DNA of 64,000 nt from Macrostomum lignano (Eukaryota), in contig NIVC01000227.1 in NCBI GenBank assembly GCA_002269645.1, positions 620,001-684,000 of the forward strand, read 5' to 3'. The notes under the pieces are model-generated. The model worked only from the letters and a program-made list of their open reading frames with translations, made no database searches and had not been told where the DNA came from. Shown one piece after another: positions 20,207 through 60,112 of this stretch (within the stretch, counting starts at the first letter, position 1; every line of letters starts with the position of its first letter). Position numbers and translations under genes: made by a program.

Positions 20207-20760
20207 ACTCCCTCACTGACCTCCCTCACCTCCCTCACTCTGACCTCCCTCACTCTGACCCTCACACTGACCTCCATCACGCTGACCTCCCTTACACTGA
20301 CCCCCTCACATTGACCTCCCTCACACTGACCTCCATCACGCTGACCTCCCTTACACTGACCTCCCTCACATTGACCTACCTCACACTGACCTCCCTTACA
20401 CTGACCTCCCTTACACTGACCTCCCTCACACTGACCCCCTCACATTGACCTCCCTCACACTGACCTCCCTTACACTGACCTACCTCACACTGACCTCCCT
20501 CACACTGACCTCCCTTAAACTGACCCCCTCACATTGACCTCCCTCACACTGACCTCTCTCACACTGACCTCCATCACACTGACCTCCCTTACACTGACCT
20601 CCCTCACACTGACCTCCCTCACACTGACCCCCTCACATTGACCTCCCTCACACTGACCTACCTCACACTGACCTCCCTCACACTGACCTCTCTCACACTG
20701 ACCTCCCTCACACTGACCTCCCTCACACTGACCTCCCTCACATTGACCTCCCTCACATTA
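20207..20760. repeat. 15-bp minisatellite (acactgacctccctc)n
   Basis: About 35 copies, directly visible. The TLTSL ORFs are artefacts of it. Confidence 0.95.
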
Positions 20761-21182
20761 AAAATGAGTTTTTTTTTAGTTTTTATCGCCGGAAAAATTG
20801 TGAGGTCTCTAAGAATTTCCTCGCAAACTCGCTTTCCTTCCGTAGCAGATCAAATATTTTTGACGCGCACTGCTAATTAATACGAGCTGCTTCTTGACTG
20901 GAATAAATTAATAAATTTGGCTAATTAGCGGTTTGCACCTGGCAAAGTCAAGCCAGACTTACTATTAATTTGGCCAAATTGTTGAATTCCTGTCAATTTG
21001 AGACTGTCTCAACGCATCTGAATACTCACCTGTCATCAACGCTCTGTTGCAGGTGCGTTTGTGTAATCAACCTATCGTGTGCTTCTTCAAATTCAGCATA
21101 AATAACCGATGTATATTGCACTCAGAACTCGCAGGTAAACATTTTTGCTAACTGACCAAGGTATCTGCTTCAAGCAAACAGA

Positions 21183-22544: not shown

Positions 22545-25150
22545 AGACGTAGTAGTAGTAGTCGACGTAGCGGTACGTGACTTACTTGACTTAGCTGCAG
22601 GGCTGTCCTGGGGGGGGGGCACAGCGGGAATGCGCGAACGTCCATTCCGCTAATCCCTGAACGGCCGACGCGTCGCTATAGACAAAGGGTTGGCGCCCCC
22701 CAGGGAGGTCCCCCAGTGTCGCCAGCAGCTATAGTGCTCTCTGGAAAGGAGAGTTCGGCCCTGCGGGTGGCCCGGAGGTAGCGCATGAGCTGATGAAAGT
22801 TTTCGGGTTTGCACACTTCAGTAATAGATGTGTGTGGCCCGAGGTAAGTGAGTCTGGCGGAAATGCTCAGCGGTTTCGTCACCTGAGTTACAGAAACTGC
22901 AGATGGCGTTGGTGGTGTTGCCCTGCAGGTACTGGTGCCTAGAGAAGCAGCTGTGACCTAGGAGGGTCATGGTGGCAGCCCGGATGTCTCTGCGCGAGAG
23001 GCGCAAGAGGAGCTTCCGGAGCAGGTGAGAGGGCTGAGGGACAGCACCTTTGGATTGCCTGCATGTAGTGCAGTTCGCCCAGGTCGAGCGGTGCTGGGTC
23101 CTGATCCACGCTTTGATGCGCGAGTCAATGACACAGCCAGGAATCGGGACAAGAGGTTCGGGACCGAGAGAGGAGCCGGAGGCGCCAACTTTGCAAGGGC
23201 GTCAGCCAACTCATTTCCTCGGATCCCCACATGCCCCGGAACCCACTTAAGGGTGATTTTGTTGGTGGAACCCAACATGTTGAGGAGTTTGATACAGTTG
23301 AGGACTGTAGCAGAATTGGTACTACAGCCACTGATGGCGTGCAAGGCAGCTTGGCTGTCCGAATGGAAAATGATGTTCTTACCGGTTACGCCAGTGGCGA
23401 GAAGCTCTGCCGTGCAGGAGCTGATGGCGAGAACTTCATTTTGGAAGACACTGAAGTTGACCCCAGTGTACTGAGCGTGGGTTGCGATGACCCTCTCGTT
23501 CAGGAAGATTCCAACACCAAAACCGGTGTTGGCTGACTGCTTAGAACCGTCGGTGTAGCAATGAAACTCACCAGGTTTCAAGTGGTCATTGATGGTATCG
23601 CGCGAGTCTATAGCTACGGAGTAGCGTTGTTTCAGGTTGAGCGTTGTTGAGGCAATGTCATCGGTGAAGACGCAATTGGCCTGACACTCGTTGAGAATGT
23701 TGAGGCACAGGTCGCTATGCGGGACGAGGTTCCGCTTAGCAGTTGCCCTCATGTAAATGAATTTGACACCGGCATCAAGTAAGCGCCGCATCGTTCTAGC
23801 CGCCTCACCCCTGACGAAGAGGTCGAGAGGCGGTAGATTAAGGAAGGCCCCATGCCGGCAAAGGGCGTGGACCTGGTGGCGTTGCAGATAAGCCTACACG
23901 CTCTGCCCTGGATCGTGTTGAGCAAATCTGCGTGGCTTTTGACCTGGGTAGCGCTAACCCAGACAACCGAGGCGTACGTAATGGCGGGTCTAACTACGGA
24001 AGTGTAGATCCACCAAAGCCGCTTTGGGGATAGACCCCAAGAAGTGCCAAGTGCTCGTCGGAGCTGGGCCAGGATGGCTGAGGCACGCTTGGCTTTTGCT
24101 TTCACGTGGAAGGACCAGTTGAGCCGGTGGTCAAGTATGACCCTAAGACATCTGGTCTGGTGCGCGAAGGCAATATCTCTGCCGTATAACTGCAGAGGTC
24201 GTATGTTCCAGCGTATTCTGCTGGTGAACATAATGGCAACAGTTTTGGGCTCAGAGAGTTCCAGACCGTTGTCATTGGCCCAGGATTCGGCTTTGCGGAT
24301 AAAGCTCTGCATCAGATCCCTGAGCGTGCTGGGAGACGGTCCTGCCACAATGGCAGTGACGTCGTCAGCATGCCCGACTTTGAAGACGGGATCAGGTCGT
24401 GAGTCGCCCAGGAGAGCGTCCATGACCAGGTTCCAGAGCGTCGGGGTGAGGACTCCGCCTTGGGGTCCACCCTTACAGACTCTGGTGGAGGCAGTTTGCC
24501 CAAGAAGTTGGGCAGTGACCGTACGGTTGGAGATCATGTACATGATCCACCGTATGAGGGTAGCGTGAGCTTTGCGGTTTTGAAGGGCCCTCTGAAACGC
24601 TTCAAAGATAACGTTGTCGAAGGCGCCAATAATGTCGAGAAAAAGAGCCAGGGCGTTACCGTCACCAAGTACTACCCGTTCAATCTTCTCGACAATCGCA
24701 TGCAGGGCGCTGTCAGTCGACCTGGTACGGAAGGCGTGCTGATTATTGCTTGAGGGGCATTGCTGTCAGCTCGCATGAAAGCAGCGACCAGAGCTTGCTG
24801 ACGTTAAGCTAATTGGCCTAAAGGCCTTGACGCTCTGGTAGTTCACCCTTCCCGGGTTTGGGAATGAAGACTACCCGAGCTTTGGTCCAGCACTTGGGAA
24901 CGTATCCCAGCTGGATAGAGGCCCGCATGAGATTGCGAGTCTCAAGAACGAGGGTATATTGGCTGCTTCACGAAGAAGAACAGGGTAGATACCATCAGGT
25001 CCAGGAGATTTGAAGGGCTTGAAGGTTCTGACCGCACGAGCGATTAAGTCTTCAGTGATAATGCCCGCCGCTAGGGTGGCTCCCCTGACCAGGCCAGCTG
25101 ACTCCCGCTCTGCTGCGACCCCCTGCTGTCTCGGTTCTGTCTCCCACTCA
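22545..25150 (-). mobile_element. 5'-truncated, decayed non-LTR retrotransposon with RT + RNase H (I-group, Loa/Tad1/R1-like)
   Basis: KPFKSPGPDGI, GGPQGGVLTPTLWNL, HADDV (degenerate YADD), RNase H YTDGSK..SDSQAAL..WVPGHVGIRGNELAD, C-terminal CSFC..ETAEH, and a (CTA)n-like tail near 22550. At least four frame changes. Confidence 0.92.
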
Positions 25151-27175: not shown

Positions 27176-30100
27176 AGTGTGCAATATTGCCCCTGTCTGT
27201 GCTGACATTTGGAGTCTTCTACATGGCTGGCTACAGACCATACGGGATTGTGATGGATGATAGAATAATTATCTCCCTTAACGCTCTTAATTCACAGTTA
27301 TTTTCAGCACATACTACTTGTATCAGCCTCTTCTGTATAAACAGAGCGGAGATCGAATATCTGAGCTAGAATATCTACAATTTTGCTAAGCTGTGCCAGA
27401 AGTACCGGCCTAAGATCTTTATTAGCTATTCTGCAGTTTCCTTCCATGACTCGATCTCGACCCTGAAATCAGATCTGCATTCACGCAGACTGCCCACTCG
27501 ACTGTAGGGGTCACGAGGCTGCAAAAGTTATGGCTCGTGTGCTGATACTTGATGTGGATCACTTTCGCGACAGCCAGACTTTTTAGCTGCAAGTTGCTGG
27601 TCGCTGCATGAAGTTATCAGATAGAAGTACTTTACTGAAGTAAAAGAAGAAAACCATCTGGAAAACCGTTCGCCGTGCCAAAGTTTGAAATTTAAAACTT
27701 CCACGCTTGGCAAATCGAGAAAGCCCCATCTAAAAATAGTGCATATACATTACCTTGAAGTCGAGCCTAAAGTACGTGTGCGGGCATCCAGTACCAGTGT
27801 TACAGAAAGAAAAAATGTCTGCAAATTTTTATCATCTGTCCCCAACTCCGAACCCATTTCCGAATCCCAAATCCGATTTCTTTAAAGCATATTAAAGACA
27901 CTACGATAAATATGATAATTCATTACCGGCTTTCAGCTCATTTCTAAGAAATACAAGTGTAGCGTCCTTGTAGCGAGTCCTTCGAAAGTCAGATAGTTGG
28001 ATTGAGCTTAACTTTTTGATTTTTATGGCTATTGATTAAAAACAACAGTGAATTTTTTATTAGTAATACTTTCCAACAAACTAACTAGGCCCTAGTTCTT
28101 CTAGAATCATAAACCTTTGGCTCAATTTTAAGGATGATCCGAAGTCATCTAACTCAATTGAACTCCTCCTTGAACCTTTATTAGTGAGATCTGACTTTGA
28201 AATCCGTTTACTTAATTATTTTAGAAACCATATATGGCAAATGGACAATGAAATTCGAGCATATACACAGTACACAGAATACTATATTTATCCATTCGTT
28301 CGGTATCAAAAACGTTTTTTATTTAAATTTGATTTTTGATTCAACCTATAGGGACGTGACAGGCGGTATACAACATTTCTCTGCTCTTCCCGACATAGAT
28401 ATCGATCCCTTGGGATTCAGTTCCATTTCAGCATTCGCCAAGCCATGGTTAATCCCTTCGAAGCCATGCTAGTCATTCGCTCGGTCAAATTTAGATTCGA
28501 TCCGCACACTCGATTTCAATTAAGCGCTTCATTGATTATACCGCCGACAAATCTGCGCCTCTACTTGCTGTGAATTTCAACTCAGACACTTGTATCTCGT
28601 TCCTTGAGCATAATTAGGGTTTGGCCATAGACAGCAGAATGCAGAAAGCAATTTGGAAATAGATGCGTCCAATTTGGTATTCTGTGATTTGGTCTGCTCA
28701 AGAAACGCTCGTACAAGACAAATGGAGATATGGCACATACAGGCATAGCCATAGTTAATCATGGTTTTGCCATAGACGATAAAGCACTTTAAATAGAAAC
28801 ACTTGGTATAGTAGATCAATCAGCGTGCAGAAGCCACGAGTGATTGTTCGGTAATTATCTATGGAAAAGACATGCTGGACAGTTACATTGTAGTAATATT
28901 CCTTTTCAACTTCGGATTCGTCAAAAGTGAGTTTAAATCCGTCGTCAGCGTATGCAAAACTACATAGCGCTCAAGGGGAAGAGAATGAGTGTCTATGGTA
29001 AATTTTTAGAGAAAGTGACTCCGAATTCGTCTAAGTAAGTGAAATTCGTCAGTGCAAATACAGCCTGATCAGAAAAAGTGTTTGCTTTGTCCATGGTTAG
29101 AAAAGAAGATGTCTATGGTAAATTTAAGTAAGAAGGTGAGTGAATTTCGTCTGGAAAAGAAGCCCAATTTCTTGAAATCTTCATTTCATGCTTTGATTGT
29201 TGTCAGGGATTCCCTCTAAATAAATCCCGGAACCATAGTTGTATTCTATGGTTGAAGTTGGGGATGGGGGTGTGGGGGCGAAGCCCCCACATTCTTACCA
29301 TAGACAAAATTTCATTAAGAAATTTCTCGAGTCACGAAGGAAGAGAAGAGAGAAGCTCGCTTATTTAGATACATACAATGGATAAATAATCAGCGGTCCC
29401 AGTGCCATAGACAAATCGTTGTCACGTGCTGCGACCGCTGATTCTTTGCATTGTTTTTCTGTTTGACGATCCTACAGACAATGCATTGTTTGTAGTAATG
29501 GATTGTTCTGCATTAAAAATGTGAATAATGATCGTCAAATTGCTAAACAATAATCCTTGCAATATGTCCGGGAAAGTGATCGATTAAATCCCGCAAAATG
29601 AAATGTATGTCAGATAACCTCCCTGAAAGTGAGCTTCAAAGTGGTTAAGGATAGTTAAACAATACTGTCTTCTGCTCAAGGAAAAGGCAGCGGCTGGCAA
29701 CCAACTAAACCAATGAATCTAGCACTTTTATGAAATTTATGCTCAGCTGCATCCATAGAATAAACAGTTACTTTGGCAGCTGATGAGCAATCAAACTTAT
29801 TTAGTTAAGAGCCTCAGCTTCACTCTGGAAAAGAAAAGGGCCACAGGATGAGTTGTAGATTGATTGACGCCAGTTCATATCGGATTTGTCGATAGCGTCA
29901 ATTTTTAGTCGTAGCCAGAGTTGAACTTACATCGTATCGCACAGCTGTGTTACTGATCTTTATATGTTTGAATTAAAATGAGGAAGGCCTGCTGACATTG
30001 AAGACTGCTGTTTCTGCAACTAGGTTTCTTCCTTGTGGCAGAAAAAATGGAGCACACAAAGCCACGAAGACACATTTCTCCGTGTATTTACCCTGTGAGA

Positions 30101-34199: not shown

Positions 34200-35330
34200 T
34201 CATCCAGCAGCGGTGGTCCTAATATTGTACGCCGTCGTCACCGAGGTGGCCAGGTTGATGCCCGACGACTCCTTCGCTGACGCCTTTCGGCGCCTGCCGC
34301 ACAGGCCAGCGGTTGCCAGGCAGATGGCGCCCCCAATCGTCTGGCAGAAGGCCGTACGAAAGCTTCGTCCAATGAAGTAAGCAAACGGATCGAAAATGCT
34401 GTTCAAGAACATGAAGCCCTCCAAAACTTGATTGCCCAAGTCTAACTGGCTCTCGGTTAGTTGTTTGCTCGGCGACAAGTACCTGGCGCTGTAGCCTTCG
34501 TACACAGAGAAGGCCGCCCTGGGCGCGTGCGTCAGGAAGAACACGAGGTTCATGCCGATCATCGCGGCGCAGGCGCCGACCATTTTGTTGCGCTTCAGGT
34601 TGGCCGAGCCGCTGGTCAGGCGGCTCAACTTGCTGGCCTGAAGCCGAAGCGCAACGGCCACGATGATGCATCCGGATAGAAGAACAAAGAACAGTGCCAC
34701 CTTTGACACGTAGAACTCGATATTGTACTGCAGTGGGTCCAAGACGGCCAACAATGCTTCGTCAGTCCTGCTATCGCAGCGGTTGTCAATGTACTCTTGC
34801 TCGGCAGACCACAGGGCCGGGTCAATGCTGCCTAACAGAAACAGAATGATTAGCATGATGCAGTGGTTGCGTCCAGTCATGATTGTCTTCACTTTCAGCG
34901 GCATCACCACGGCTAGGACGCGTTCAACTGTAAGTCCAACGTGAAAGTACGGCGTTCCATTCAGTATGTACTTGTGGACATAGTTGACAATGTAACACGC
35001 GGCCGCGTTTTCGTTCATGAGCTTCAGAAACGGGGACAGTTTGTAGTTCATTGTGCGCATCAAGTAGATCTGGTAGCAGTTGAAGCCGCCGATTGCCAGC
35101 GAAAGCGCGTCGAAGCTGGTAATGATCAACATCGTGCGCCTCGATATTTTAGGGAAAGTCTTCGAGTTGAGTAGGATGGTGATGAAGCAGAGAACGTTGA
35201 CGACTATTCCGAAAACCATTAAAGTTGGCATCAGCCAAATGACGATGTTAGTGAAGGCCCAGCGCCAGCTGGGAATTTCAAACCAAGGCAGTTCTTCTTC
35301 TTCGGCTGTACTATTGCTGCTGTCGTACAT
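34200..35330 (-). CDS. Class A (rhodopsin-like) GPCR, peptide-receptor-like, intronless, 376 aa
   Basis: Seven hydrophobic segments, TM1 GIVVN, TM3 C..TVERVLAV, TM6 FFLTHAP, TM7 NSIFDPFAY (DPxxY variant), an N-terminal N-glycosylation sequon and a C-terminal Cys. Confidence 0.93.
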   Translation of the reverse strand: MYDSSNSTAEEEELPWFEIPSWRWAFTNIVIWLMPTLMVFGIVVNVLCFITILLNSKTFPKISRRTMLIITSFDALSLAIGGFNCYQIYLMRTMNYKLSPFLKLMNENAAACYIVNYVHKYILNGTPYFHVGLTVERVLAVVMPLKVKTIMTGRNHCIMLIILFLLGSIDPALWSAEQEYIDNRCDSRTDEALLAVLDPLQYNIEFYVSKVALFFVLLSGCIIVAVALRLQASKLSRLTSGSANLKRNKMVGACAAMIGMNLVFFLTHAPRAAFSVYEGYSARYLSPSKQLTESQLDLGNQVLEGFMFLNSIFDPFAYFIGRSFRTAFCQTIGGAICLATAGLCGRRRKASAKESSGINLATSVTTAYNIRTTAAG

Positions 35331-36934: not shown

Positions 36935-37590
36935 ATACTTTTTTGCGATTGAATTCGTCCAAACTGCAAAAACCTTTCGTCCACAAATGCTTTCTTAATG
37001 GGAGCTAAATTTAGATCATACCATAGACAACTGTGTTCACGCAAAACGGTTCATCCAGTTTGTAAAACATTTCGTCCCCTAGACTAGAGACCGAGTGTAC
37101 TGTTCCTACCATAGTTAACACCCAATTGACAGTTCGCTTTTGCTACCACTACAGCTACAGCAACGCATTTCTTCCATTCTGAACCCGGCAAAACAGTCGA
37201 AGATGAACCGAGGCCTGGCGGATGCACATTTTGAAGAGAGAGGTCGAAGCTGCACTGCACGTGATTACACAGGAGATGTGCCAGCAATGGACCAATCGCA
37301 CTGTGGGTTACTACGGCCGCTGTTTGGACTACGAAGACATTTTGAACTAACATTCTAACAAGAGACACTGTTTTTGCTTTGTTCAATATCTCGTGATATC
37401 AAATAAAGTCGCTCCGTTTAGCTGTTAGCTGTTTGGACGAAGGGTTTTGACGAAATGTTTTACAAACTGGATGAACCGTTTTGCGTGAACACAGTTGTCT
37501 ATGGTATAATCTAAATTTAGCTCCCATTAAGAAAGCGTTAGTGGACGAAAGGTTTTGCAGTTTGGACGAATTCAATCGCAAAAAAAGTAT
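36935..37590. mobile_element. Element with ~142-bp inverted repeats enclosing a ~370-bp spacer
   Basis: 36935-37076 is a near-perfect reverse complement of 37449-37590, and both arms carry CCATAGAC/GTCTATGG. The spacer weakly resembles a degenerate IS630/Tc1 C-terminus (S.ILNP, IT.E.CQ.W....Y.RCL). Confidence 0.7.
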
Positions 37591-38506
37591 ATTTGAATAG
37601 CCTGCTGACCGCGATCTGCATGATGTAGCTGTGTTTTTATGGATTATGTACTATTAGCTATACGCTATTAGGTTTTTACGGTAGCAATCAGGGGGTCTTT
37701 TTCGAAACAACGAGCCTAGTGTAAGTTCTATGGTATGTGCCGTCGTAAGTCAGAACTTTGCGCTTAGCGTAAGACGGGTGGTAAAGCTGTTTCTCGAAGA
37801 AAATTTTTAGAGTTCTCGCAACTTACGCGGTTCGCAATTCATCGTGAAGCAAAATATGCTGTCTATGGTCAAAGTCGTAGAGTTTAAGATCAACCTTACA
37901 AAAGACCATAGACCTACGAACGTTTCGAGAAACCGCATCTGTCGCAATATTACGACCTGTTAGGCAAACCGTAAGCGTTTTCATCACAACTTACGTCTAT
38001 GGTCCATCGCAACGATTTCTATTGTTGGTTTTGGTGGACCGCGAGTCAGTTTGGTTTAAATGCACCACTCGAACTGGTTCCCACTCGATGCGAACGATTC
38101 TGTTTTCAATTAGTTTCTTTTTCAAATTTTCACTCTGCTGCCAATCTCATGTCGTTTAGCGTCGCTTTTCGCTAAAAAAATTATTGCTTATGCCACTCGA
38201 GTGCAAAAATATCAACTGCTAACTGCCAAATTTGGCGTTCGCTGGTGTCCTGCTCTTGTGTCCTAGAGGCTGGTTTTTGAGAGGCCTCAAATAGCTCACT
38301 ATTTTATTGCACCCTCAACTGAAATATTTTCAATATCCTGTTCTCATTTTCTGACAGAGTCTTTTCCACCATCATCATCTCGACAGAGTATTGGATTTTG
38401 ACAGAATGGCATCACTGATGACAGTGACTCAGTTAAGTCCTTCCACTTCTCCCAGGGATTTCAACTCGATAATGAGCTTCAATTTTGGGTGTCAATTTTG
38501 AAATTG

Positions 38507-39562
38507 CCGGAATTTCTGCATCATTCCCGGAATTTCTGCATCCTTCCCGGAATTTCTGCATCATTCCCGGAATTTCTGCATCATTCCCGGAAGTTCTGCA
38601 TCATTCCCGGAATTTCTGCATCATTCCCGGAATTTCTGCATCATTCCCAGAGTTTCTGCATCATTCCCGGAATTTCTGCATCATTCCCGGAATTTTTGCA
38701 TCATTCCCGGAATTTCTGCATCATTCCCGGAATTTCTGCATCATTCCCGGAATTTCTGCATCATTCCCGGAATTTCTGCATCATTCCCGGAATTTCTGCA
38801 TCATTCCCGGAATTTCTGCATCATTCCCGGAATTTCTGCATCATTCCCAGAGTTTCTGCATCATTCCCGGAATTTCTGCATCATTCCCGGAATTTCTGCA
38901 TCATTCCCAGAGTTTCTGCATCATTCCCGGAATTTCTGCATCATTCCCGGAATTTCTGCATCATTCCCGGAATTTCTGCATCATTCCCGGAATTTCTGCA
39001 TCATTCCCGGAATTTCTGCATCATTCCCGGAAGTTCTGCATCATTCCCGGAATTTCTGCATCATTCCCGGAATTTCTGCATCATTCCCAGAGTTTCTGCA
39101 TCATTCCCGGAATTTCTGCATCATTCCCGGAATTTTTGCATCATTCCCGGAATTTCTGCATCATTCCCGGAATTTCTGCATCATTCCCGGAATTTCTGCA
39201 TCATTCCCGGAATTTCTGCATCATTCCCGGAATTTCTGCATCATTCCCGGAATTTCTGCATCATTCCCGGAATTTCTGCATCATTCCCGGAATTTCTGCA
39301 TCATTCCCGGAATTTCTGCATCATTCCCGGAAGTTCTGCATCATTCCCGGAATTTCTGCATCATTCCCGGAATTTCTGCATCATTCCCAGAGTTTCTGCA
39401 TCATTCCCGGAATTTCTGCATCATTCCCGGAATTTCTGCATCATTCCCGGAATTTCTGCATCATTCCCGGAATTTCTGCATCATTCCCGGAATTTCTGCA
39501 TCATTCCCGGAATTTCTGCATCATTCCCGGAATTTCTGCATCATTCCCGGAATTTCTGCATC
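38507..39562. repeat. 20-bp minisatellite (tcattcccggaatttctgca)n, ~53 copies
   Basis: Directly visible. The 364- and 381-aa ORFs are repeat artefacts. Confidence 0.98.
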
Positions 39563-40340: not shown

Positions 40341-40884
40341 ATTCATCGTTAAACAGTTCATCATAGTCAGCACACTTCTATTTAGTATCGAAATACATGC
40401 GATATAACGTTTTCCTAATCTTTCATATAGTCTCATGGGTGGGGTGGCTAGATAATCCCGAAGCAAAATAATTAACTAATTGAATTTGCTCCCAGATAGC
40501 AAGATTGATCCCCGTGTCACCATGTAGAGCTGGCATCATAACTATAGCATGTGGATAATGTTTCAATACGTACTGTATGTGCGCTCGAAGCGGCAGTTAT
40601 TAAAACCCAGAGATTTCCGTGGAGTAAAACAACTGATTGGTACGCCTGATATTCTTAGAAATGGGCTGCTCATTTTAGGAATTACCATAGACAAATTCGG
40701 TGGAGAAAAGTACAGTACGTCGATAGCTGTTCATGAGGTCAATAAGGGATTGACGATTAAGGGCGTCGACTTATACAAGTCGATCACTACAATACTGGTG
40801 TTTCTTGTAAAATTGCACACTACTATATGCCGTAGCGTCTACTATGAGTAGATTACTGATGCACCATTTTTTAAAATAGTAGAT

Positions 40885-41575
40885 TTGGCGCTACTTTTGT
40901 GTGTAGCTTTGGCGCCTCTTGTGAGTAGCTTTGGCGCCACTTTTGTGATTAGCTTTGGCGCCACTTTTGTGAGTAGCTTTGGCGCCTCTTGTGAGTAGCT
41001 TTGGCGCCACTTTTGTGATTAGCTTTGGCGCCACTTTTGTGATTAGCTTTGGCGCCACTTTTGTGAATAGCTTTGGCGCCACTTTTGTGAATAGCTTTGG
41101 CGCCACTTTGGTGATTAGCTTTGGCGCCACTTTTGTGAATAGCTTTGGCGCCACTTTTGTGATTAGCTTTGGCGCCACTTTTGTGATTAGCTTTGGCGCC
41201 ACTTTTGTGAATAGCTTTGGCGCCACTTTTGTGATTAGCTTTGGCGCCACTTTGGTGATTAGCTTTGGCGCCACTTTTGTGAATAGCTTTGGCGCCACTT
41301 TTGTGAGTAGCTTTTGCGCCTCTTGTGAGTAGCTTTGGCGCCACTTTTGTGTGTAGCTTTGGCGCCACTTTTGTGATTAGCTTTGGCGCCACTTTTGTGA
41401 ATAGCTTTGGCGCCACTTTTGTGAGTAGCTTTTGCGCCTCTTGTGAGTAGCTTTGGCGCCACTTTTGTGATTAGCTTTGGCGCCACTTTTGTGAGTAGCT
41501 TTGGCGCCTCTTGTAAGTAGCTTTGGCGCCACTTTTGAGTAGCTTTGGCGCCTCTTGTAAGTAGCTTTGGCGCCC
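40885..41575. repeat. 24/21-bp minisatellite (agctttggcgccacttttgtgatt)n
   Basis: About 29 copies, directly visible. Confidence 0.96.
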
Positions 41576-42992
41576 AAGCCTAAAATTTCTAATTGCTATA
41601 AACCCTCAGCTATATTTGAATGTTGCCTTCGAATACCTTAGGAATCCAGCAGTCATTAAGGAGTTCCTCTGAGTCAAGAGAAAATTCAAAAGAAAACACT
41701 CCCCAAGAAACACACTCAAGAGCGAAATGAAGAAAAAGTCGTGAGCAGAGAAGATGGAGCTCACTGAAATACTTTGTATTAGTAGGCGCAGGCTGGGTTT
41801 TTTCAAGCACACGGACTACTTTTCATGTTGAGTGCCTTCTTCCCAGTAACAATCCTACATTCAAGGTTCAAAGGGGGCTAATGAAGCACGCCGAACGTTG
41901 CAAGTAAAGTACACATATTATATATATATCCTAAAATTACTGCTTGGCACGAGTAGATGAGCCTACGTGCTCAAGTTTGTGTAAAATGAGGCAATGGAGG
42001 TATCACATGGCTTACATGACATGGCATGGATATGCAGTGTAGATGCAGATCGAACGGGCACACGCCTGTTCAAAAAAAATACTAAAGACAACAATCTTTA
42101 AAGGTGACAATTTTGCTTGCATTTATTATTACTATTATTATGATTATATCATGTTGAAACATATTACTATAACTCTAATACATGTTACACATTAGTCTGC
42201 AGCTGTATATATCAATATTTACGGTTTCTTCTACAAAGGGGATCGCGGTCGAACGCAATCCGCGCGGTGCTCAAATAGATTAAAGAAGACAGCGCGATTG
42301 ACGGTAAAGCCGTAGGGGGGGGGGCGATACAAAAGTGAAAATGAGTTCATATTTTATGCTTTGTACACCTATTTTACACCTGTTATAATTTTGTCTTCTG
42401 CTTTGGCGTTGGGCCCTATTTGTATGTACGAGCGCAGTCTGACTATGCCAATATGACCTATGTGAGAAAATAGAAAAACAAAAAAGAAAATAAGAAACGT
42501 TTCTTAAAACATTCTCTCGGATGTGCCTTTAAGAAAGGAGACAAATGGATGGATGGATCATGAATTATGAATTGCTATTTTTGCAGTGCAACTGAAAAAA
42601 GACGGAAAAATGGATTCGGCGCGAGATAGCAGTTATCCAGACTCCCAATCGTCGAAGTTAAAATTTTATTTCAATTTGTTTCAATTTCAATTTCAAAGCT
42701 TGTAGAGACTACGAGCAAGCAATTTAATCAAAGATAGCCATAAAACATGCATTTTGAGCCTCAATGCTAGTTGTCCATGCCATGGTAAAAATTGTGTCAA
42801 ACCGGCAGGCCATTTAATCCTTGGAGCAATCATTTAAGCACTGAAATCCATAGACAGCGCTGTCTATGCCGTTCCAATCTCAGTTTTTTAACATGTCAGA
42901 CGAAAGTGACCAAAGCCAGCACCATTTTTTAAGACATCGACGGAATCGCTGCCGAAGATGCCGGAAAGTAAAAACTTTTCTGTCGTGTGTTT

Positions 42993-43140
42993 CTTGCCCC
43001 GGGTGAACGTCTATGGTCTCAGTGTAAATTTAATTTATTTGCATCGAAATAGCAGTTGCACAGTGAAATAAACCATTTATTTGCACCGATGCAAATAAAT
43101 GAAATTTACACTGAGACCATAGACGTTCGCCCGGGGCAAG
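42993..43140. repeat. Hairpin: 54-bp inverted arms with a 40-bp loop, downstream of YR copy 2
   Basis: cttgccccgggtgaacgtctatggtctcagtgtaaattt.atttatttgcatcg, with its reverse complement at 43087-43140. Confidence 0.92.
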
Positions 43141-43496
43141 TGGGGGATACATGAAAAGGCCGAGCAAGATAGTGCTTAAATTTAATCCCCGCTTTGGCCC
43201 GGCCAGCTGCCTTTCTCCTCTGTGTATTTTCATTTCTTGGACTCCAAGAAATAATTTTCTATGGCTAAAAAACATTCTTTCAAATGAGTTGAGACTCCCA
43301 TCAGGCGTTTCTTGGAGGCCAAGAAATAATTGTCTATGGTAGAAACACAAAGATGCTGTTATACTTTTGAAACAAGACCGGTTTCACAACACTGAATAGC
43401 AACAAATGGGGATCGAAAGTGAAAAATCTAACAACGGGCAGTCTTGTATCAAGAGGGTGTCAGAGGGAGTCAGCGAAGGAAAGAGGATGAAACTAA

Positions 43497-44843
43497 TCAA
43501 AGTGGAACACCACTCTGTTGCTGTCTCCAAAAGCCTCCATCCAGAGGAGGCAAGGGCACTTGCACCTGCGTCGCAGTCACCCGAGACTCACTCACCGGTT
43601 GGCCGGTTGAGGAACCACTCAACAGTGCACTCGTGCGTTTCTCCATGGTCACCGAGGTACCGATGTACTTCTCCACTGCACTGGAGCTGTGGCCAGTCAC
43701 ACGGCAGATATCCGCCCGTTCCATACCAGCCTCGCGGAGACGGGTTGCGCAACTCTTACGGAGACTCTGATTCGAGTAGCGTCCAGTGTCAGAGGGAGCA
43801 ACCACGGCGTCCTTGACGACGGTTGCCAATGAATGACGTCCAATCGGTGCCCTTGTCAACCAGGCAGATCCAGGCTGGCCATTCCAGTTTCGATTCCATC
43901 CCAGAAACAGCGCCTCGTTGCACTCATTAGGACGCACAGAGACGTACTGCTTGTAGACGCACAAAATGCATTTTTGGTGATTCTCAGTGTGGAAAGCACG
44001 AACGACTTTGGGGTCCCTTCGTAGTCCTTGTAAGCCGCCCTGATGAGTTTTGGTCACGGCATTGTCCACATACTTCAGACACTCTTCATCGTCAACCGTC
44101 TCAAGCTTGATTTGGCGATCGAACAGCAGATCTCGTAACTCCTGGCCACCACGCAATGCAAAGTGTTCGCCAACGAGCCAAACAAGCGTGATCACCAGCA
44201 TCTTGGGTTCCTTCACTCCAAGCACACCTTCGATCTAAAGCTTCTCTTCAATAGACTCGGGGATCACATCTGCCTTCCGCAATCCTGCACCCTTTCCAGC
44301 CTTGGTCGAGATTTTCATGGCGGTATCTAGAGCACGTTTACTGTCGGCGAACTCTTTGTCAAGCCAGAAGCTCCAATTCTTATTGAACGTGTTTTGCCAG
44401 TGATACTGTAGCATTGAATACAGATCCTTCAGCGTCGACACAGAGTAGCGCTCACCATCTTTGTTCCGGGCCTCCATAACAAAAAATTTCAGCAGGTAAT
44501 TCAGGTCACATTTGCTAGCATCCTCCAGCTCAGCGAGAACCATAAGTGACGGGCCTTCACCCATCGCCCAGGCACGCTTCTTCTCGTCATGCCACTCGCG
44601 GAAGACGGAAAAGGCCCACTGCGCCTTTTTCTTGGTGGTCTTCGGCACGGTCTCTTCAATGTGTCTGGCAATTTCATTCTCTGAAAGTTGCTCGAACCGG
44701 CCGGTGAGAGCGGCTTCAATAGGTCCAGCGTTATCCCCGGGCTTCAGGATGAAATCCAGTAGGTCCGGCGAAATCTCCATATCCGGGGCTTCAACAACGA
44801 CAGCAGCAGAGATGTCACCCATATTCGGTACCAAGCTACACAC
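43497..44843 (-). pseudogene. Crypton-like tyrosine recombinase (DUF3504-type) with one in-frame TAG
   Basis: ORFs 44843-44235 and 44225-43497 are in the same frame. The TAG at 44235-37 sits where the family has Trp (EEKL*IEGVLG vs EE.LW..G.LG). Motifs: L.KFFVMEARNKDGERYS..TL, FALRGGQE, KTHQGGL, YSNQSLRKSCAT, TGHSS.AVEKY. Confidence 0.9.
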
Positions 44844-45720
44844 AACTGAAGCTTTTCTGATCTTACACAGAATATTCGGCTTTATAGAGCTTTATAGCCA
44901 ATAGTCTATGGCCGAGGCTTAGTCTCATTTCCTCCCGCTGGCTGCGGCAATTAAATATAATCCCCACTTGATTTCGTTGTCTATGGCCTAGAACGACTTC
45001 GGACTGCGCTTCTAGGCCTCGGCTTCGCCTTAGCCGTTCCTAGGCCAAAGAAACGAAATCAAGTGGAGATTATCTTATACGAGTGCTCCAAGGATTAAAT
45101 TGCCTGCCGGTTTGACACACTTTTTACCATAGACGACTAGCATTGAGGCTCAAAATGCATGTGTTTTTGCTATCTTGGATTAAATTGCTTGCTCGTAGTC
45201 TCTACTAGCTTGCAAAATGCTATAGTTTGTCGAGAAACTCCCTATGAAGCTAACCACCAGCATGGAATCAACCAGCATCACTTTGAATTTAACTTCTGTT
45301 CCCCGGCGAGCAGAGTTGAGAAACATAATTTTTCAAGTATTGGCGCGTCTGTGTAGAGTTTATACACTGGCTCGAGAAAGCAGGAAGTTTGCTCGAGCTC
45401 GCAGACAGGAAAACTGACGAGGCCACCGCTACATGCAGTGTGTGTTGAGTGCGTGCGTGTGCTTGCCGGCTGAGCAGACTCGTGTATACCGACTGACTTT
45501 CGGGCTGCACTATTGAAGCTAGTCTTTATAAAAACTGGTCATACACGCTCTCGTTAATCATTGGTGACGTAGTTCAAGAACTTCTTGCTCATGAACAACT
45601 AAAGTAAAATAATCCTTACACTCGATTTGCTTAGAAGATCGGATTTGTTTAGAGCGGATTTTACCTTATCGAATTTGTCTATGGGCAAATCCCCTACAGC
45701 GTTGTCTAGAGCATACCAAA

Positions 45721-46500
45721 GACAACTTGATAACTCAGGACCGGAAACGAGCCAATTCATGGTGAAAAAAGTATGAGGCTCGTTCAACCCCTACACTGCT
45801 GGTTGGGATTCTATTCACCAGCGTAGCTTGTGGAATGGCCTGCAGAGCAGGCCATAGACTATTTCAGCATATTTTTGACACAGCCGTAGCCTGCGATAGC
45901 AGGCGGATTAGCTTATACTCGTAGCAATAAAGGATAAACATGAAAGCAAAAAACAAGCTGGAGTGGGGTGCAGATGGACGGGTGGGTGGGTATAAATGAC
46001 ACAGTAAAATTGTGGGATTCATCAAATCAAGAAAGCTTGAAGCTACATGATAAAAGTCAAGTGCCAATTATTTAACGGAATCATCGATCAGCAGCTTTAT
46101 TTAGTGCAATAATTTCTAAGTATCGGACAGTGTTTGTCATGGCTGCTCAAGTGCATTTTGATCCGGATACCGACTCCGAACTAGAGGAGGAGGAAGGCTG
46201 GCTAACAGCGGATGAGGGTGAAGATGAAGAAGACGAGGACCTGCATCTCCAGCCAAATGAAGACGCCTTTAAGTATAAGATGGAAGGAAGCGTTGTGCGA
46301 AGGATGTGGTAAGAAGATGGCTGCCACTAACCTGGCACGCCACAGAAAGATCTGCCAAAACTGACCGGACCGGCCCGTGACGGGACGGCGCGCCTATGCC
46401 GCAAGGCGATAAAAAGGCGAGAAGAAGAAGAAGAAGAATGAAGACGCCGGAGGCTTGCCAAATGATTGGCTCGTTTCCGGTCCTGAGTTATCAAGTTGTC
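45721..46500. mobile_element. Cassette bounded by perfect 36-bp inverted repeats, containing an acidic exon-like fragment
   Basis: 45721-45756 is the exact reverse complement of 46465-46500. Inside, ATG 46139 to a GTAAG donor at 46309 encodes MAAQVHFDPDTDSELEEEEGW... Confidence 0.55.
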
Positions 46501-47253
46501 CTTGGAGCATACTAAATGCACTGCAGGTGATACGAGAAATATAAACAAGAATCGCCTGATACGAAGAGATTCTGTATGGCTCATCTCCTAGTATCAGGCG
46601 ATTCAATTTGTATGTAATCCACGGCATGTGCGACCCGAATATAATGCCTTATCTCCGCTAGCCATGTCTATGGCGTTGCTTTGTCTATGGTAGCGGAGTT
46701 ACGCTACTGATTATCTCCGCTCATTTAACACTGGGGGAATAGACGAGGCGCACGTAGGCAAAGTGGATCACATGACGTTCATTTATAAGAAAATCGAGAG
46801 TAGCCTTCGTCTACTTCAAGGTCAACTTTCGACGAAAGAAAGTACAAAACCACCCAGATAAGGAATTTTCAGTTTGATTAGAAACCAACCCCCTGGTATC
46901 CTGGAATGCTACGTTGTCAAGGGGAATTACACCTATGGCAGTGTACAATCTCTTCATTGAGTATTAACTATATCTCAGCGTTATTACACAACAATCTGTG
47001 ATTAAACTAAAGTACCTCAAGTACGACTTTAGTAGGACAGAAACTTTGTTTCTTAGAAAATATTTAATAGCTGGCTTATACAAAAATACACTACCGAGAT
47101 AGAAGTTTTCCGGGTTTTTGTCAGCACAAAATAACGTAATTGTATTTTCTGCATTAAGCCAGTCTTCAACCATTTTCTAAGAAACAAAGTTTCCCACCCC
47201 GCTAAAATCATCCTTGGACTCACTGAGTGCAACGCTTAAAAAACACTTGAAGG

Positions 47254-50169: not shown

Positions 50170-50690
50170 GCTTTGATCGGCTTTATTGTCTATGGCCGAG
50201 TGCAGTTCTGTAGAAGTGGCTATATTGTCTATGGCCGAGTGCAGTTCTGTAGAAGTGGCTATATTGTCTATGGCCGAGTGCAGTTCTGTAGAAGTGGCTA
50301 TATTGTCTATGACCGAGTGCAGTTCTGTAGAAGTGGCTATATTGTCTATGACCGAGTGCAGTTCTGTAGAAGTGGCTATATTGTCTATGACCGAGTGCAG
50401 TTCTGTAGAAGTGGCTATATTGTCTATGGCCGAGTGCAGTTCTGTGGAAGTGGCTATATTGTCTATGACCGAGTGCAGTTCTGTAGAAGTGGCTATATTG
50501 TCTATGGCCAGTGCAGTTCTGTAGAAGTGGCTATATTGTCTATGGCCGAGTGCAGTTCTGTGGAAGTGGCTATATTGTCTATGACCGAGTGCAGTTCTGT
50601 AGAAGTGGCTATATTGTCTATGGCCGAGTGCAGTTCTGTAGAAGTGACTATATTGTCTATGACCGAGTGCAGTTCTGTAGAAGTGACTAG
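50170..50690. repeat. 39-bp minisatellite (attgtctatggccgagtgcagttctgtagaagtggctat)n, ~13 copies
   Basis: Directly visible. The unit contains GTCTATGG. Confidence 0.96.
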
Positions 50691-51744
50691 TTATTATCGA
50701 TGGCTGAGTGCAGTTCAACTAAACTGATAAACACAATACTTTTTAAAGCGATTTTTATGCGTTATGAAAATTTGAGCCTAAGTGCCCCCCCCACCCGCAG
50801 CCAACCATATTATGAAGTGTCATGAGCACTGTACTGGGTCTAGAAGTTGCATAGTTGAAAGTTTCTGTCTTTGTGTCGTCAAAATTCGCGTGAGTCTAGC
50901 TGCGACTCTTCAGGCTCGTTCGTGCAGCCGCCTGCCTATCTCGCCAATTCAACTGTCATTCGAGATACTGTATAAGCAAAAGCATTCATACAGCTAGTTA
51001 GATAAATTTCCTTCTATGCTTTGTTTAACCTTGCCTGCGGTAAAAACAGATTGTTAGCTACTAGTGCTCTCAATTTTAACTGTCTTATTTTTGTGTAAGC
51101 TGAGAACGCACTCACTCAGCCTGTCTAGCCATGCATGCTAGCTTGTAGACGAGTCAAAAAAATACACACAAGAAGACTAAAACGAATAGGATGACCAAGG
51201 TACCGATGAAATTTCCCAAAGGCAGAGCACATGGGAGGGGGGCACACCCAAACGTACAGGAGCTGCTCTGGCCAGCATCAGATAATCCCTGTTGACGAAG
51301 TGAGGTGAGCGAGGCTCTCATGGGCTCTGGGGACACCTATGCGGTCTGCTCTTGCCCTTATGCCTATCCGAGCGAAAATGTTCAACGCCTAAGGTGGAAG
51401 AAAAGCAAATTTCCTGTTCAAAGCTGTGCAACGTCTCCTATAACCCCCTCCGCCTTAGTCAACTCTGTCCTACCATCATAAATTTCAGCGCACCTCTTGT
51501 AATTAGCTTTCTCACACCTTAGCAGCTCTTGGCCAGTAATTACGAGTATCACCTTTGAGCAGGCCCCTTGAACTGTCACAAGGGGGGGGGGTCAATCCGA
51601 ATAAAAACTATTTCTTGAGAGAGACTTCAGACCAGATTATTCTCCACTCGATCCGTTTCCTATTCTCTGATTTAAATTTTTTAAAATCTGGATAAACCCA
51701 GTTTCTTTTCAAGCAGCGCTGCACACAGACGGATCATAAATTAG

Positions 51745-52495
51745 TGAAGCATATTGGGGATAAACTAGTAAAGCATATTGGGGATAAATTAGTTATGCAT
51801 ATTGGGGATAAACTAGGGAAGCATATTGGGGATAAATTAGGGAAGCATATTCGGGATAAATTAGTGAAGCATATTGGGGATAAATTAGGGAAGCATATTT
51901 GGGGATAAATTAGTGAAGCATATTGGGGATAAATTAGTTATGCATATTGGGGATAAATTAGTTATGCATTTTGGGGATAAAAGTTAGTGAAGCATATTGG
52001 GGATAAATTAGGGAAGCATATTGGGGATAAATTAGGGAAGCATATTGGGGATAATAGGGAAGCATATTTGGGGATAAATTAAGAAAGTAAGAATATTGGG
52101 GATAAATTAGGGTAGCATATTGGGGATAAATTAGGGAAGCATATTCGGGATAAATTAGTGAAGCATATTGGGGATAAATTAGGGAAGCATATTTGGGGAT
52201 AAATTAGTGAAGCATATTGGGGATAAATTAGTTATGCATATTGGGGATAAATTAGTTATGCATTTTGGGGATAAAAGTTAGTGAAGCATATTGGGGATAA
52301 ATTAGGGAAGCATATTGGGGATAAATTAGGGAAGCATATTGGGGATAATAGGGAAGCATATTTGGGGATAAATTAAGAAAGTAAGAATATTGGGGATAAA
52401 TTAGGGTAGCATATTGGGGATAAATTAGGGAAGCATACTGGGGATAAATCAGGGTAGCATATTGGGGATAAATTAGGGAAGCATATTGGGGATAT
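51745..52495. repeat. ~24-bp G-rich minisatellite (gcatattggggataaattagggaa)n with a 294-bp higher-order duplication
   Basis: The diagnostic variant tcggg recurs at 51851 and 52145. Confidence 0.95.

Positions 52496-55555: not shown

Positions 55556-60112
<4,557 letters not shown>

What the first reader, a model, noticed from the sequence alone, without database searches (positions are those of the whole stretch)
42696..45211. Tyrosine-recombinase (Crypton-like) element enclosed by long inverted repeats and internal hairpins
Seen: a 448-codon YR frame with one premature stop lies between ~130-bp inverted repeats. It has a 54-bp-arm hairpin on its 3' side and a GGCTTCGCC-containing hairpin on its 5' side. 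Known: Cryptons are generally described as lacking long TIRs and moving through YR-mediated circular intermediates. Inference: this may be a YR element family with a distinct end architecture (inverted ends plus cruciform-forming sites), or a Crypton nested in or captured by a TIR element.
Basis: partly seen in the sequence, partly recalled or inferred. Interest (0 to 1): 0.8.

Follow-up and report, generated by a model that had tools for sequence, protein, structure and literature searches.

The report
Crypton transposon with hairpins, inverted ends
This is a broken copy of a Crypton-type "jumping gene" from an unidentified animal. Its non-coding ends carry conserved DNA hairpins, long inverted repeats and many copies of one exact 8-letter word, features not described for animal Cryptons that point to where its recombinase may act.

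Summary
A tyrosine-recombinase (YR) frame of the DUF3504/QRICH1 (CryptonA) type lies on the minus strand at 43493-44822. It sits between 151-bp inverted arms (87% identical), with a 54-nt-arm hairpin 3' of the gene and a GGCTTCGCC-apex hairpin 5' of it. The gene carries a C-terminal frameshift as well as the stop codon.

New findings:
- The arms are not a foreign MITE. They are homologous to DNA next to the closest YR relative (55% aa) on another contig, though there in a different arrangement.
- The 5' hairpin, capped by GCGAAGC (a known hyperstable DNA mini-hairpin), recurs in four other lineages: the window's second Crypton, Macrostomum lignano, and two metagenome lineages.
- Inverted repeats linking the 5' and 3' ends recur in relatives. 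In two families the element ends are defined independently of the repeats.
- GTCTATGG marks the hairpin stems and the arms. It is the commonest 8-mer of the window (39 sites, 1.5 expected).

Six M. lignano copies show no terminal TIR and no TSD. Whether the 151-bp arms are this copy's true ends remains unresolved, because only one copy is available.

Verdict: a new architectural variant of Crypton, with candidate cis sites for YR transposition in animals.

The parts
42688..42838 (+). Left inverted arm (module X, outer end at 42688, inner end at 42838). It lies on the 3' side of the gene.
   Evidence: 151-bp inverted match to 45074-45219, 86.8%. Homologous to L002 1843-1989. Its copy of the 8-mer is degenerate (GTCCATGCCATGG).
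42848..42868 (.). Palindromic double site CCATAGAC-AGCGCT-GTCTATG ('pal'): two inverted copies of the 8-mer around a 6-bp centre. It resembles a core-type YR site.
   Evidence: Sequence read and motif hit at 42848(-). A comparable CCATAGACTATGG lies at the outer end of module X in L002. As a fold it is weak, z = -2.1.
42993..43140 (.). 3' hairpin (hp3): 54-nt arms and a 40-nt spacer, with GTCTATGG/CCATAGAC in the stem (43009+, 43117-).
   Evidence: DNA fold -63.5 kcal/mol, z = -19.4. Only sub-threshold generic miRNA-hairpin matches in Rfam.
43233..43349 (+). Two 42-nt direct repeats. Each has a small palindrome TTTCTTGGnnCCAAGAAA followed by TAATT(T/G)TCTATGG.
   Evidence: the repeat finder D2 (83%) and I8. 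Motif at 43332.
43493..44822 (-). Tyrosine-recombinase pseudogene (QRICH1-type N domain plus DUF3504 catalytic domain). TAG at 44237-44235, frameshift around 43545-43600, conserved tail ending at 43495-43493.
   Evidence: Homologues P0019 57%, P0001 55%, M. lignano P0004 40% (tblastn; first found). Best PDB profile hit is QRICH1 9hjt, E 1.3e-6. Foldseek returns QRICH1, Cre/Tre, XerA, Tn1549 Int and IntI on a low-confidence model.
44904..44911 (+). GTCTATGG site 82 bp upstream of the ATG. It is the outer partner of 45127(-), placed roughly symmetrically about the hp5 apex.
44954..45076 (.). 5' hairpin (hp5): outer arms 44954-44978 and 45052-45076, an inner imperfect palindrome, and apex GGCTTCGCC at 45021-45029 (GCGAAGC on the gene's sense strand). 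GTCTATGG at 44979, with a degenerate partner CCAAAGAA.
   Evidence: DNA fold z = -8.7. The same design occurs in the window's second YR, the M. lignano family, and contigs L006 and L017.
45074..45219 (-). Right inverted arm (module X, inner end at 45074 abutting hp5, outer end at 45219). It lies on the 5' side of the gene and carries GTCTATGG at 45127(-).
   Evidence: blastn match to L002 1880-1989, 65%, E 4e-8, same relative orientation as in L002. Three-way alignment.

Best explanation
The locus is a decayed copy (one stop codon plus one frameshift) of a YR-only DNA transposon of the Crypton kind, CryptonA/DUF3504 group, in an unidentified metazoan genome.

It belongs to a sub-lineage whose only named member is from the flatworm Macrostomum lignano. 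The non-coding DNA of this sub-lineage has a conserved design:
- a long 5' hairpin capped by the hyperstable DNA mini-hairpin GCGAAGC;
- usually a 3' hairpin;
- inverted repeats that pair the 5' region with the 3' region;
- in the window's elements and M. lignano (with variants in L002 and L006), several copies of the exact word GTCTATGG placed as inverted pairs on the hairpin stems and repeat arms.

The 151-bp arms (module X) are lineage-specific Crypton DNA, not a captured foreign TIR element.

Inferred mechanism (not shown):
- GTCTATGG is the recombinase-binding or crossover word. It contains TATGG, the terminal repeat reported for most CryptonS elements.
- The hairpins extrude as cruciforms or fold in single-stranded DNA, nucleated by the GCGAAGC cap, and so present paired sites.
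- The element moves through a YR-made circle. In that circle, the right-end repeat and the repeat beside the 5' hairpin would extend the hairpin into one long palindrome containing the junction.

I give roughly even odds that the two X arms are the true termini of this copy. The alternative is that they result from a permuted or tandem integration, or from a YR-mediated rearrangement.
For: YR identity:
- Pfam DUF3504 at 1.5e-15, plus QRICH1 and Phage_integrase.
- PDB profile hit to QRICH1.
- Foldseek hits to QRICH1, Cre, XerA, Tn1549 Int and IntI.
- R...K...(Q)xxR...H...Y pattern invariant across the clade.
- It is the only long ORF inside the arms.

Mobility of relatives:
- Six M. lignano copies at different loci, 97-99% identical over 1.85 kb, with all flanks different.
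- Three copies of the L006 family at 99.3-99.8%.

Module X belongs to the lineage:
- L002 1843-1989 aligns with both arms over about 145 bp.

Conserved 5' hairpin with GCGAAGC apex:
- Window YR1 and YR2, M. lignano, L006 and L017.
- Contigs L002 and L007 break inside it.
- GCGAAGC mini-hairpin, Tm 76.5 C (PMC13037366).

Inverted repeats joining the ends:
- YR2, z = 10.7.
- L006 family, 17/17 nt, with B' within about 6 bp of the independently defined right end.
- L013/L022, z = 4.4 and 6.8.
- L015 (44 nt and 29 nt), L020 (40 nt), L016 (32 nt).
- M. lignano, 18 nt, subterminal.

Motif:
- 39 sites against 1.5 expected.
- The commonest 8-mer outside tandem arrays.
- Sharp logo, with few one-mismatch variants.
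- Seven sites inside this element.
- Enriched around the M. lignano copies.
- TATGG termini of CryptonS (PMC3212892).
Against: - Only one copy of this family is available, so its ends are not defined. No unambiguous TSD or empty site was found.
- In L002, module X lies downstream of the gene in the opposite relative orientation to the window's 3' arm. The window's architecture is therefore not simply shared.
- M. lignano copies have no terminal TIR, and their ends (GTATAC... and ...GTAGGTT) carry no GTCTATGG.
- Two inverted sites would invert, not excise, the DNA between them unless the core is symmetric.
- GTCTATGG is absent from 14 more distant relatives. It is common in unrelated contexts of the window, so it could be a host-factor site.
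- The canonical active-site His is Gln throughout the clade, so activity is unproven.
- The AF2 model is poor: pLDDT 60, TM 0.27-0.38.
Confidence: 0.68

Rival explanations
1. The X arms are not the ends of one mobile unit. On this view the Crypton proper runs from the 5' hairpin to the palindromic site (about 42848-45076). It lies between X copies because of one of three events: integration beside or inside resident Crypton-derived DNA, integration of a circle opened at 'pal' instead of the usual junction, or a later YR-mediated or palindrome-driven rearrangement.
For: - In four families with independently defined ends, the left terminus sits at or within about 40 bp of the base of the 5' hairpin, with nothing conserved outside it: M. 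lignano, L006/L025/L026, L013/L022, and the start of L015/L020 similarity.
- In L002, X follows the gene and ends exactly where the 5' hairpin should begin. The window's X-hp5 junction therefore looks like a circle or tandem junction.
- Contig L008 (P0019, 57% aa by tblastn; its cluster representative scored 60%) ends at a CTCTATGG 150 bp after the stop codon.
- Copy L001 sits between inverted arms that lie outside the unit shared by six copies. L016 looks similar, judged from the conserved left end of two related families.
- The arms differ by 13% while the 1.3-kb ORF has only two lesions.
Against: - No YR, hairpin or X remnants were found in the flanks that would mark a second element.
- Inverted repeats joining the 5' and 3' regions are the rule in relatives.
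- X co-occurs with this YR lineage in two genomes.
Confidence: 0.35
2. GTCTATGG is not the recombinase's site. It is a binding site for a host protein, or a word spread by other repeat families, and the Cryptons merely carry or exploit it, for example as a promoter element.
For: - It occurs in about 25 unrelated contexts in the window, including a 39-bp satellite, and in an 83-bp satellite in M. lignano.
- One site lies 82-100 bp upstream of the ATG in YR1, YR2 and the M. lignano family.
- It is absent from more distant YR relatives.
- It is not at the M. lignano element termini.
Against: - Its orientation relative to the gene differs between M. lignano and the window's two copies.
- Within the elements it sits as inverted pairs on hairpin stems and repeat arms rather than at one promoter position.
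- The TATGG core matches CryptonS termini.
- No such motif is reported in the M. lignano genome paper.
Confidence: 0.25
3. A DDE-type TIR transposon or MITE captured a Crypton, as in MarCry-1_FO. The arms would then be the TIRs of an unrelated cut-and-paste family.
For: Long TIRs are typical of such elements. A possible 7-bp TSD, TTTCAAA/TTGCAAA, can be read. A MarCry precedent exists (PMC3212892).
Against: - No DDE ORF lies inside the arms.
- There are no other copies of the arms in 64 kb.
- The arm sequence is homologous to DNA beside a 55%-identical YR gene in another genome, and there it is not arranged as a TIR.
- The candidate TSD is itself near-palindromic.
Confidence: 0.05
4. The locus is a remnant or non-autonomous derivative of a DIRS-like YR retrotransposon, which has inverted terminal repeats.
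For: Inverted terminal repeats together with a YR are the DIRS1 hallmark (background in PMC13465315).
Against: - There is no RT, RNase H or methyltransferase remnant. The whole 2.5 kb is accounted for.
- The YR is DUF3504/QRICH1-type (CryptonA), not DIRS-type.
- Intact relatives are 1.85-2.0 kb and encode only the YR.
Confidence: 0.03

Closest known systems
CryptonA elements (Kojima & Jurka 2011, PMC3212892) and their DUF3504 relatives, including Glomhoppers (PMC13465315)
   Same: A single gene encoding a DUF3504-type YR with a QRICH1-like N-terminal domain. The size is about 2-2.5 kb (CryptonA-1_OL is 2073 bp, CryptonA-2_SP is 2263 bp). There is no RT and no clear TSD. Relatives are multicopy.
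   Different: Published animal Cryptons are described as having no terminal repeats, direct or inverted. This copy has 151-bp inverted arms. Its lineage has conserved GCGAAGC-capped hairpins, repeats that pair the two ends, and a recurrent exact 8-mer.
CryptonS elements of oomycetes and diatoms
   Same: Most share TATGG terminal direct repeats, taken to be the crossover sequence. TATGG is the core of GTCTATGG.
   Different: The YR group is different. The M. lignano element termini do not carry TATGG. No hairpins or TIRs are reported for CryptonS.
DIRS1-type YR retrotransposons
   Same: A YR together with inverted terminal repeats and internal complementary sequences that make sense only in a circular junction.
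   Different: No reverse transcriptase or RNase H, and a different YR clade.
Folded-DNA substrates of bacterial YRs (integron attC, CTX-phi attP)
   Same: Imperfect palindromes of 60-150 nt that place inverted recombinase-binding words on a stem. Foldseek lists the integron integrase among the matches.
   Different: This is a resemblance from established knowledge only. Neither strand selectivity nor binding has been tested here. These are eukaryotic elements with a different YR clade.
QRICH1 / ZMYM domesticated DUF3504 proteins
   Same: QRICH1 is the best structural and sequence match in the PDB (9hjt).
   Different: The window gene is a multicopy-family pseudogene flanked by repeats. The clade keeps R, R, H and the Tyr nucleophile and has no extra host domains.

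Membership tests
Crypton (YR-only DNA transposon), CryptonA group | Encodes a tyrosine recombinase as its only protein, with no RT or DDE transposase | tested here: met
   It is the only long ORF between the arms. Pfam DUF3504, Phage_integrase and QRICH1. Foldseek returns QRICH1, Cre, XerA and others. tblastn finds nothing else.
Crypton (YR-only DNA transposon), CryptonA group | YR related to DUF3504 (CryptonA/WOC-ZMYM-QRICH1 branch) | tested here: met
   DUF3504 scores 58 bits against a 29.7 cut-off. PDB profile hit to QRICH1 at E 1.3e-6, covering both domains. No phylogeny against named CryptonA consensus sequences was possible because Repbase is not available.
Crypton (YR-only DNA transposon), CryptonA group | Catalytic R-H-R-Y tetrad | tested here: inconclusive
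   ALRGG (Arg), QSLR (Arg present, the canonical His is an invariant Gln), GHSS (His) and Y are invariant in all 8 clade members. The assignment is by motif position, not by structure. The window copy itself is broken.
Crypton (YR-only DNA transposon), CryptonA group | No TIRs and no TSD; at most short terminal direct repeats | tested here: not met
   This copy lies between 151-bp inverted arms. No clear TSD. The M. lignano relatives have no terminal TIR and no TSD, and only an 18-nt subterminal IR.
Crypton (YR-only DNA transposon), CryptonA group | Multiple dispersed copies or evidence of mobility | not testable with these tools
   This family has one copy in the window and the source genome is not searchable. 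Relatives do meet the criterion: 6 M. lignano loci and 3 L006-family contigs.
DIRS-like YR retrotransposon | RT/RNase H (with or without methyltransferase) plus a YR between ITRs | tested here: not met
   No such ORFs or remnants. Intact relatives encode only the YR.
DDE TIR transposon or MITE carrying a captured Crypton (MarCry-like) | DDE transposase or independent copies of the TIR pair, and a TSD of fixed length | tested here: not met
   No DDE ORF. No further X copies in the window or in 26 loci. X is homologous to DNA beside another YR gene. The TSD is ambiguous.
Domesticated DUF3504 host gene (ZMYM/QRICH1/KCTD1/KIAA1958) | Intact, single-copy host gene with added host domains and loss of catalytic residues | tested here: not met
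   Stop codon plus frameshift. The locus is flanked by repeats. Relatives are multicopy. R, R, H and Y are retained.
Folded single-strand or cruciform YR recombination sites (attC / CTX attP type) | Imperfect palindrome with recombinase-binding words on the stem, used in folded form | not testable with these tools
   Predicted DNA folds have z from -8.7 to -19.4, with GTCTATGG on the stems and a GCGAAGC cap. Use in folded form needs biochemistry.

The most novel reading that the evidence does not exclude
The GCGAAGC-capped hairpins and the GTCTATGG word may be the so far unknown cis recombination sites of animal Cryptons, used in a folded form (cruciform or single strand) as with integron attC or CTX-phi attP. 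On this reading the circular intermediate carries its junction inside one long palindrome (right-end repeat | 5' hairpin | inner repeat). The same recombinase would also have scattered or amplified GTCTATGG-bounded segments (satellites, foldback elements) across these genomes, making the word the commonest 8-mer.
Probability: 0.2. Interest if true: 0.85.

Novelty: new variant of a known kind. Interest (0 to 1): 0.6.

Why it matters
How animal Cryptons move is unknown. Their ends are described as featureless, and no recombination site has been defined. Here a clade of CryptonA-type elements shows conserved, testable cis elements: a hairpin capped by a known hyperstable DNA mini-hairpin, repeats that pair the two ends, and one exact 8-mer containing the CryptonS crossover pentamer. 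The clade includes at least nine intact 441-aa genes in Macrostomum lignano, a flatworm with established transgenesis. This turns the question of what the Crypton recombinase recognises into a direct experiment. It may also explain an extreme oligonucleotide bias and part of the unusual repeat content of these genomes.

Tried and rejected
- A full-text search for GTCTATGG returned only primer sequences.
- No motif or Crypton description was found in the M. lignano genome paper. Only one unrelated review mentions both Macrostomum and Crypton.
- An exact look-up of the window's GPCR found nothing. A KLC homologue search did not identify the host beyond 'metazoan'.
- A profile search with the YR alignment added only one new protein.
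- A metagenome scan for GTCTATGG...GGCGAAGCC...CCATAGAC gave 0 hits.
- The idea that the 5' hairpin palindrome extends into a third, gene-proximal X copy was tested and rejected. Outside the hairpin only the 8-mer itself aligns, and 157 of 500 shuffles scored as well.
- No inner B/B' repeat was found for YR1 apart from the motif.
- No remnants of a second element (YR, X or hairpin) were found in the flanks.
- The weak similarity of 42567-42634 to the hp3 loop (D4 and I6) is at chance level.
- The TSD search was ambiguous because the arm ends are near-palindromic.
- Rfam gave only sub-threshold miRNA-hairpin look-alikes, and no tRNA lies nearby.
- The AF2 model is low confidence (pLDDT 60). I used it only as weak support for the YR fold.
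- The M. lignano flip/flop cannot be assigned to the YR. In L010 the switched segment extends beyond the motif, which fits palindrome-templated repair as well.
Full report
**1. The observation**

- Two inverted arms, 42688-42838 and 45074-45219, align over 151 bp at 86.8% identity (E 1e-47).
- The only long reading frame between them is on the minus strand.
- Downstream of the gene lies a hairpin with 54-nt arms (42993-43046 / 43087-43140, 96% complementary).
- Upstream lies a composite hairpin at 44954-45076 with GGCTTCGCC at its apex.
- Folded as single-stranded DNA, the two hairpins give -63.5 and -37.2 kcal/mol, with z-scores of -19.4 and -8.7 against dinucleotide shuffles.

The frame matches Pfam DUF3504 (1.5e-15, above the curated cut-off), the QRICH1 N-terminal domain and Phage_integrase.

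- The arms are about 151 bp long.
- Besides the TAG at 44237-44235, the gene has a frameshift near its 3' end. The C-terminal tail conserved in all homologues is encoded in another frame and ends at 43495-43493.
- No target-site duplication can be read with confidence, because the arm ends are themselves near-palindromic.

**2. The protein and its relatives**

Homologues are rare. They comprise a few metagenome and SRA contigs (P0019 57% and P0001 55% identity by tblastn; the shorter cluster representative P0002 scored 60%) and one named family in the flatworm Macrostomum lignano (P0004, 40%).

All eight aligned members keep ALRGG, NQSLRK, GHSS and the downstream Tyr. The usual active-site His is an invariant Gln.

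A profile of the clade finds human QRICH1 (9hjt) as its best PDB match. A low-confidence AlphaFold model (pLDDT 60) is matched by Foldseek to QRICH1, then to Cre/Tre, XerA, the Tn1549 integrase and an integron integrase.

The gene is therefore a CryptonA-type recombinase, and this copy is a pseudogene. The host is a metazoan: the window holds a kinesin light chain gene, a GPCR, a non-LTR retrotransposon and many minisatellites. The species could not be named.

**3. An unexpected word**

GTCTATGG occurs seven times inside the element:
- on both stems of the 3' hairpin;
- on the 5' hairpin;
- in the right arm;
- twice in inverted orientation around a 6-bp centre at 42848-42868;
- after each of two small direct repeats.

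In the whole window it occurs 39 times against 1.5 expected. Outside tandem arrays it is the single most frequent 8-mer of the window, ahead of all A/T-rich words. It occurs in about 25 unrelated contexts. Its logo is sharp, TTGTCTATGGY, and one-mismatch variants are few.

The same word is enriched around the M. lignano homologue: 7 sites in 11 kb against 0.27 expected. It also builds an 83-bp satellite there. It is absent from 14 loci encoding more distant relatives at 24-37% identity, so it is lineage-specific.

Kojima and Jurka (PMC3212892) report TATGG as the terminal direct repeat of most CryptonS elements. That is a lead for a crossover role, not a test.

**4. The hairpins are conserved**

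A second, very distant Crypton-like gene in the window (17893-19249, minus strand, about 25-29% identity in patches, frameshifted) has a 5' hairpin at 19529-19632. It reads GTCTATGG...GGCTTCGCC...CCATAGAC.

The M. lignano family and contig L006 carry a 5' hairpin of the same design. Contig L017 has the same capped hairpin about 410 bp downstream of its degraded gene. Contigs L002 and L007 begin inside the 5' hairpin.

The stems differ in sequence, but the apex is always GCGAAGC, usually within cgagGCGAAGCcgag. GCGAAGC is the 'extraordinarily stable mini-hairpin' of DNA (Tm 76.5 C), known from single-strand phage origins and hairpin promoters (PMC13037366). This argues that the structure acts as folded DNA.

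3' hairpins are also present in M. lignano and L006.

**5. Where elements end in relatives**

Six M. lignano copies share 1.85 kb at 97-99% identity.
- All begin GTATACATTCTCC..., at the base of the 5' hairpin.
- The five whose right end could be located all end ...CTTTCTGTAGGTT.
- All flanks differ, and there is no TSD and no terminal TIR.
- They have only an 18-nt subterminal inverted repeat.

Three copies of the L006 family define a 2.0-kb unit. It starts at the hairpin base and ends in a 17-nt sequence that is the exact complement of the 17 nt immediately following the hairpin.

The same layout (5' hairpin, repeat B, gene, B' at the right end) holds in several other cases:
- L013/L022, with ends set by inter-copy similarity;
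- L015 and L020;
- the window's second element, z = 10.7.

In a circle, B' joined to the hairpin and B would form one long palindrome containing the junction. Inverted repeats linking the two ends are thus a general property of this group. This is contrary to the published description of animal Cryptons as lacking any terminal repeats.

**6. The 151-bp arms**

No other copy of the arm sequence exists in the window or in any fetched locus except one. Contig L002 encodes the 55%-identical recombinase, and its positions 1843-1989 align with both arms over about 145 bp. The arms are therefore Crypton-lineage DNA, which argues against capture by an unrelated TIR element.

The arrangement differs, however.
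- In L002 the module starts at a palindrome, CCATAGACTATGG, 110 bp after the stop codon.
- It runs in the orientation of the window's 5'-side arm.
- It ends exactly at the contig end, where the 5' hairpin would begin. The contig's other end lies inside that hairpin.

So the adjacency 'module X then 5' hairpin' is shared between the two genomes. The window's 3'-side arm is inverted relative to L002.

Together with the hairpin-based left ends seen in relatives, this leaves two readings.
- This family really has X/X' as inverted termini.
- The window shows a Crypton (hairpin to 'pal') joined to X copies through permuted or tandem integration, or through rearrangement.

In M. lignano L001 the copy lies between inverted arms that are outside the unit shared by six copies. 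L016 looks similar, judged from the conserved left end of two related families. That keeps the second reading alive. I found no remnants of a second element in the flanks.

**7. Mechanism**

Shown:
- the recombinase family;
- the conserved hairpins with a GCGAAGC cap;
- the end-pairing repeats;
- the motif's placement and enrichment;
- recent multiplication of relatives without TSDs.

Inferred:
- GTCTATGG is the recombinase's binding or crossover word.
- The hairpins extrude or fold to present paired sites.
- Movement goes through a circle whose junction lies in a long palindrome.

Among the six M. lignano copies the 5' hairpin exists in two mirror-image forms, with several deletion derivatives. 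The structure is therefore dynamic. In one copy the switched segment extends beyond the motif, so palindrome-templated repair explains it as well as recombinase action does.

**8. Verdict**

The finding is real. It is a Crypton, and it belongs to a lineage with an undescribed, conserved cis architecture. The specific claim that the long inverted repeats bound the mobile unit is unproven. I rate it a new variant of a known kind, of moderate to high interest to transposon specialists. It offers concrete candidate sites for Crypton recombination in an experimentally tractable flatworm.

Noticed in passing
window, 39 sites (e.g. 353, 11932-12168, 19349-19626, 28625-29412, 37021-38002, 45677-46690, 50188-50623, 61484): GTCTATGG is the most frequent 8-mer of the window outside tandem arrays (32 sites, about 22-fold enriched). 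Its logo is sharp (TTGTCTATGGY) and its contexts are mostly unrelated. It is also enriched in M. lignano loci.
   Followed up: partly
window 17667-19632 (-): A second, very divergent Crypton-like element. The YR is split into two frames (17893-18726 and 18749-19249). The 5' hairpin lies at 19529-19632 with a GCGAAGC apex. An inverted repeat of about 30-60 nt (around 19470-19533 against 17671-17730, z = 10.7) joins its two ends.
   Followed up: partly
window 28600-29450: A cluster of six GTCTATGG sites, with GGGGGCGAAGCCCCC at 29273-29287 and a CCATAGTTGTATTCTATGG palindrome, but no long ORF. It may be a non-autonomous or decayed Crypton-derived sequence.
   Followed up: no
window 36935-37590: A foldback-like element with about 146-nt inverted arms (95-97% complementary) around a 372-bp centre. 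Each arm carries GTCTATGG. It is unrelated in sequence to module X.
   Followed up: no
window 50179-50716; L005 7340-8336: Tandem arrays with one GTCTATGG per unit: a 39-bp unit in the window and an 83-bp unit in M. lignano.
   Followed up: no
window 45716-46505: A 41-nt, 98% inverted repeat pair (45716-45756 / 46465-46505) lies immediately to the right of the element, with GTCTATGG sites at 45677, 45852, 46666 and 46683.
   Followed up: no
L001 4733-4870, L003/L005 3706-3870, L004 3784-3870, L009 2749-2880, L010 2676-2850: The 5' hairpin of the M. lignano Crypton family exists in two mirror-image ('flip/flop') forms, with microhomology deletions, among copies that are otherwise 97-99% identical.
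   Followed up: partly
L001 4709-4732 / 6827-6850; L016 1680-1711 / 3416-3447: The L001 Crypton copy lies between short inverted arms that are outside the unit shared by six copies. L016 looks similar, judged from the conserved left end of two related families. This may reflect insertion into inverted-repeat targets.
   Followed up: no
L006 2186-2240 and L026 19-73: The right flank of one copy equals the left flank of another (89%) and is followed by a degenerate copy of the element's left end. This hints at tandem or same-target insertions in that family.
   Followed up: no
window 3627-4766, 5634-7921, 20228-22064, 38503-39562, 40878-41574, 51736-52494, 57396-58539 and others: The density of minisatellites with 14-39-bp units is very high, including inside the kinesin light chain locus.
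   Followed up: no
window 22967-24543 (-), 34200-35330 (-), 55556-60112 (-): The window also holds non-LTR retrotransposon RT/RNase H ORFs, an intact single-exon GPCR-like ORF, and kinesin light chain exons with poly-Q tracts.
   Followed up: no
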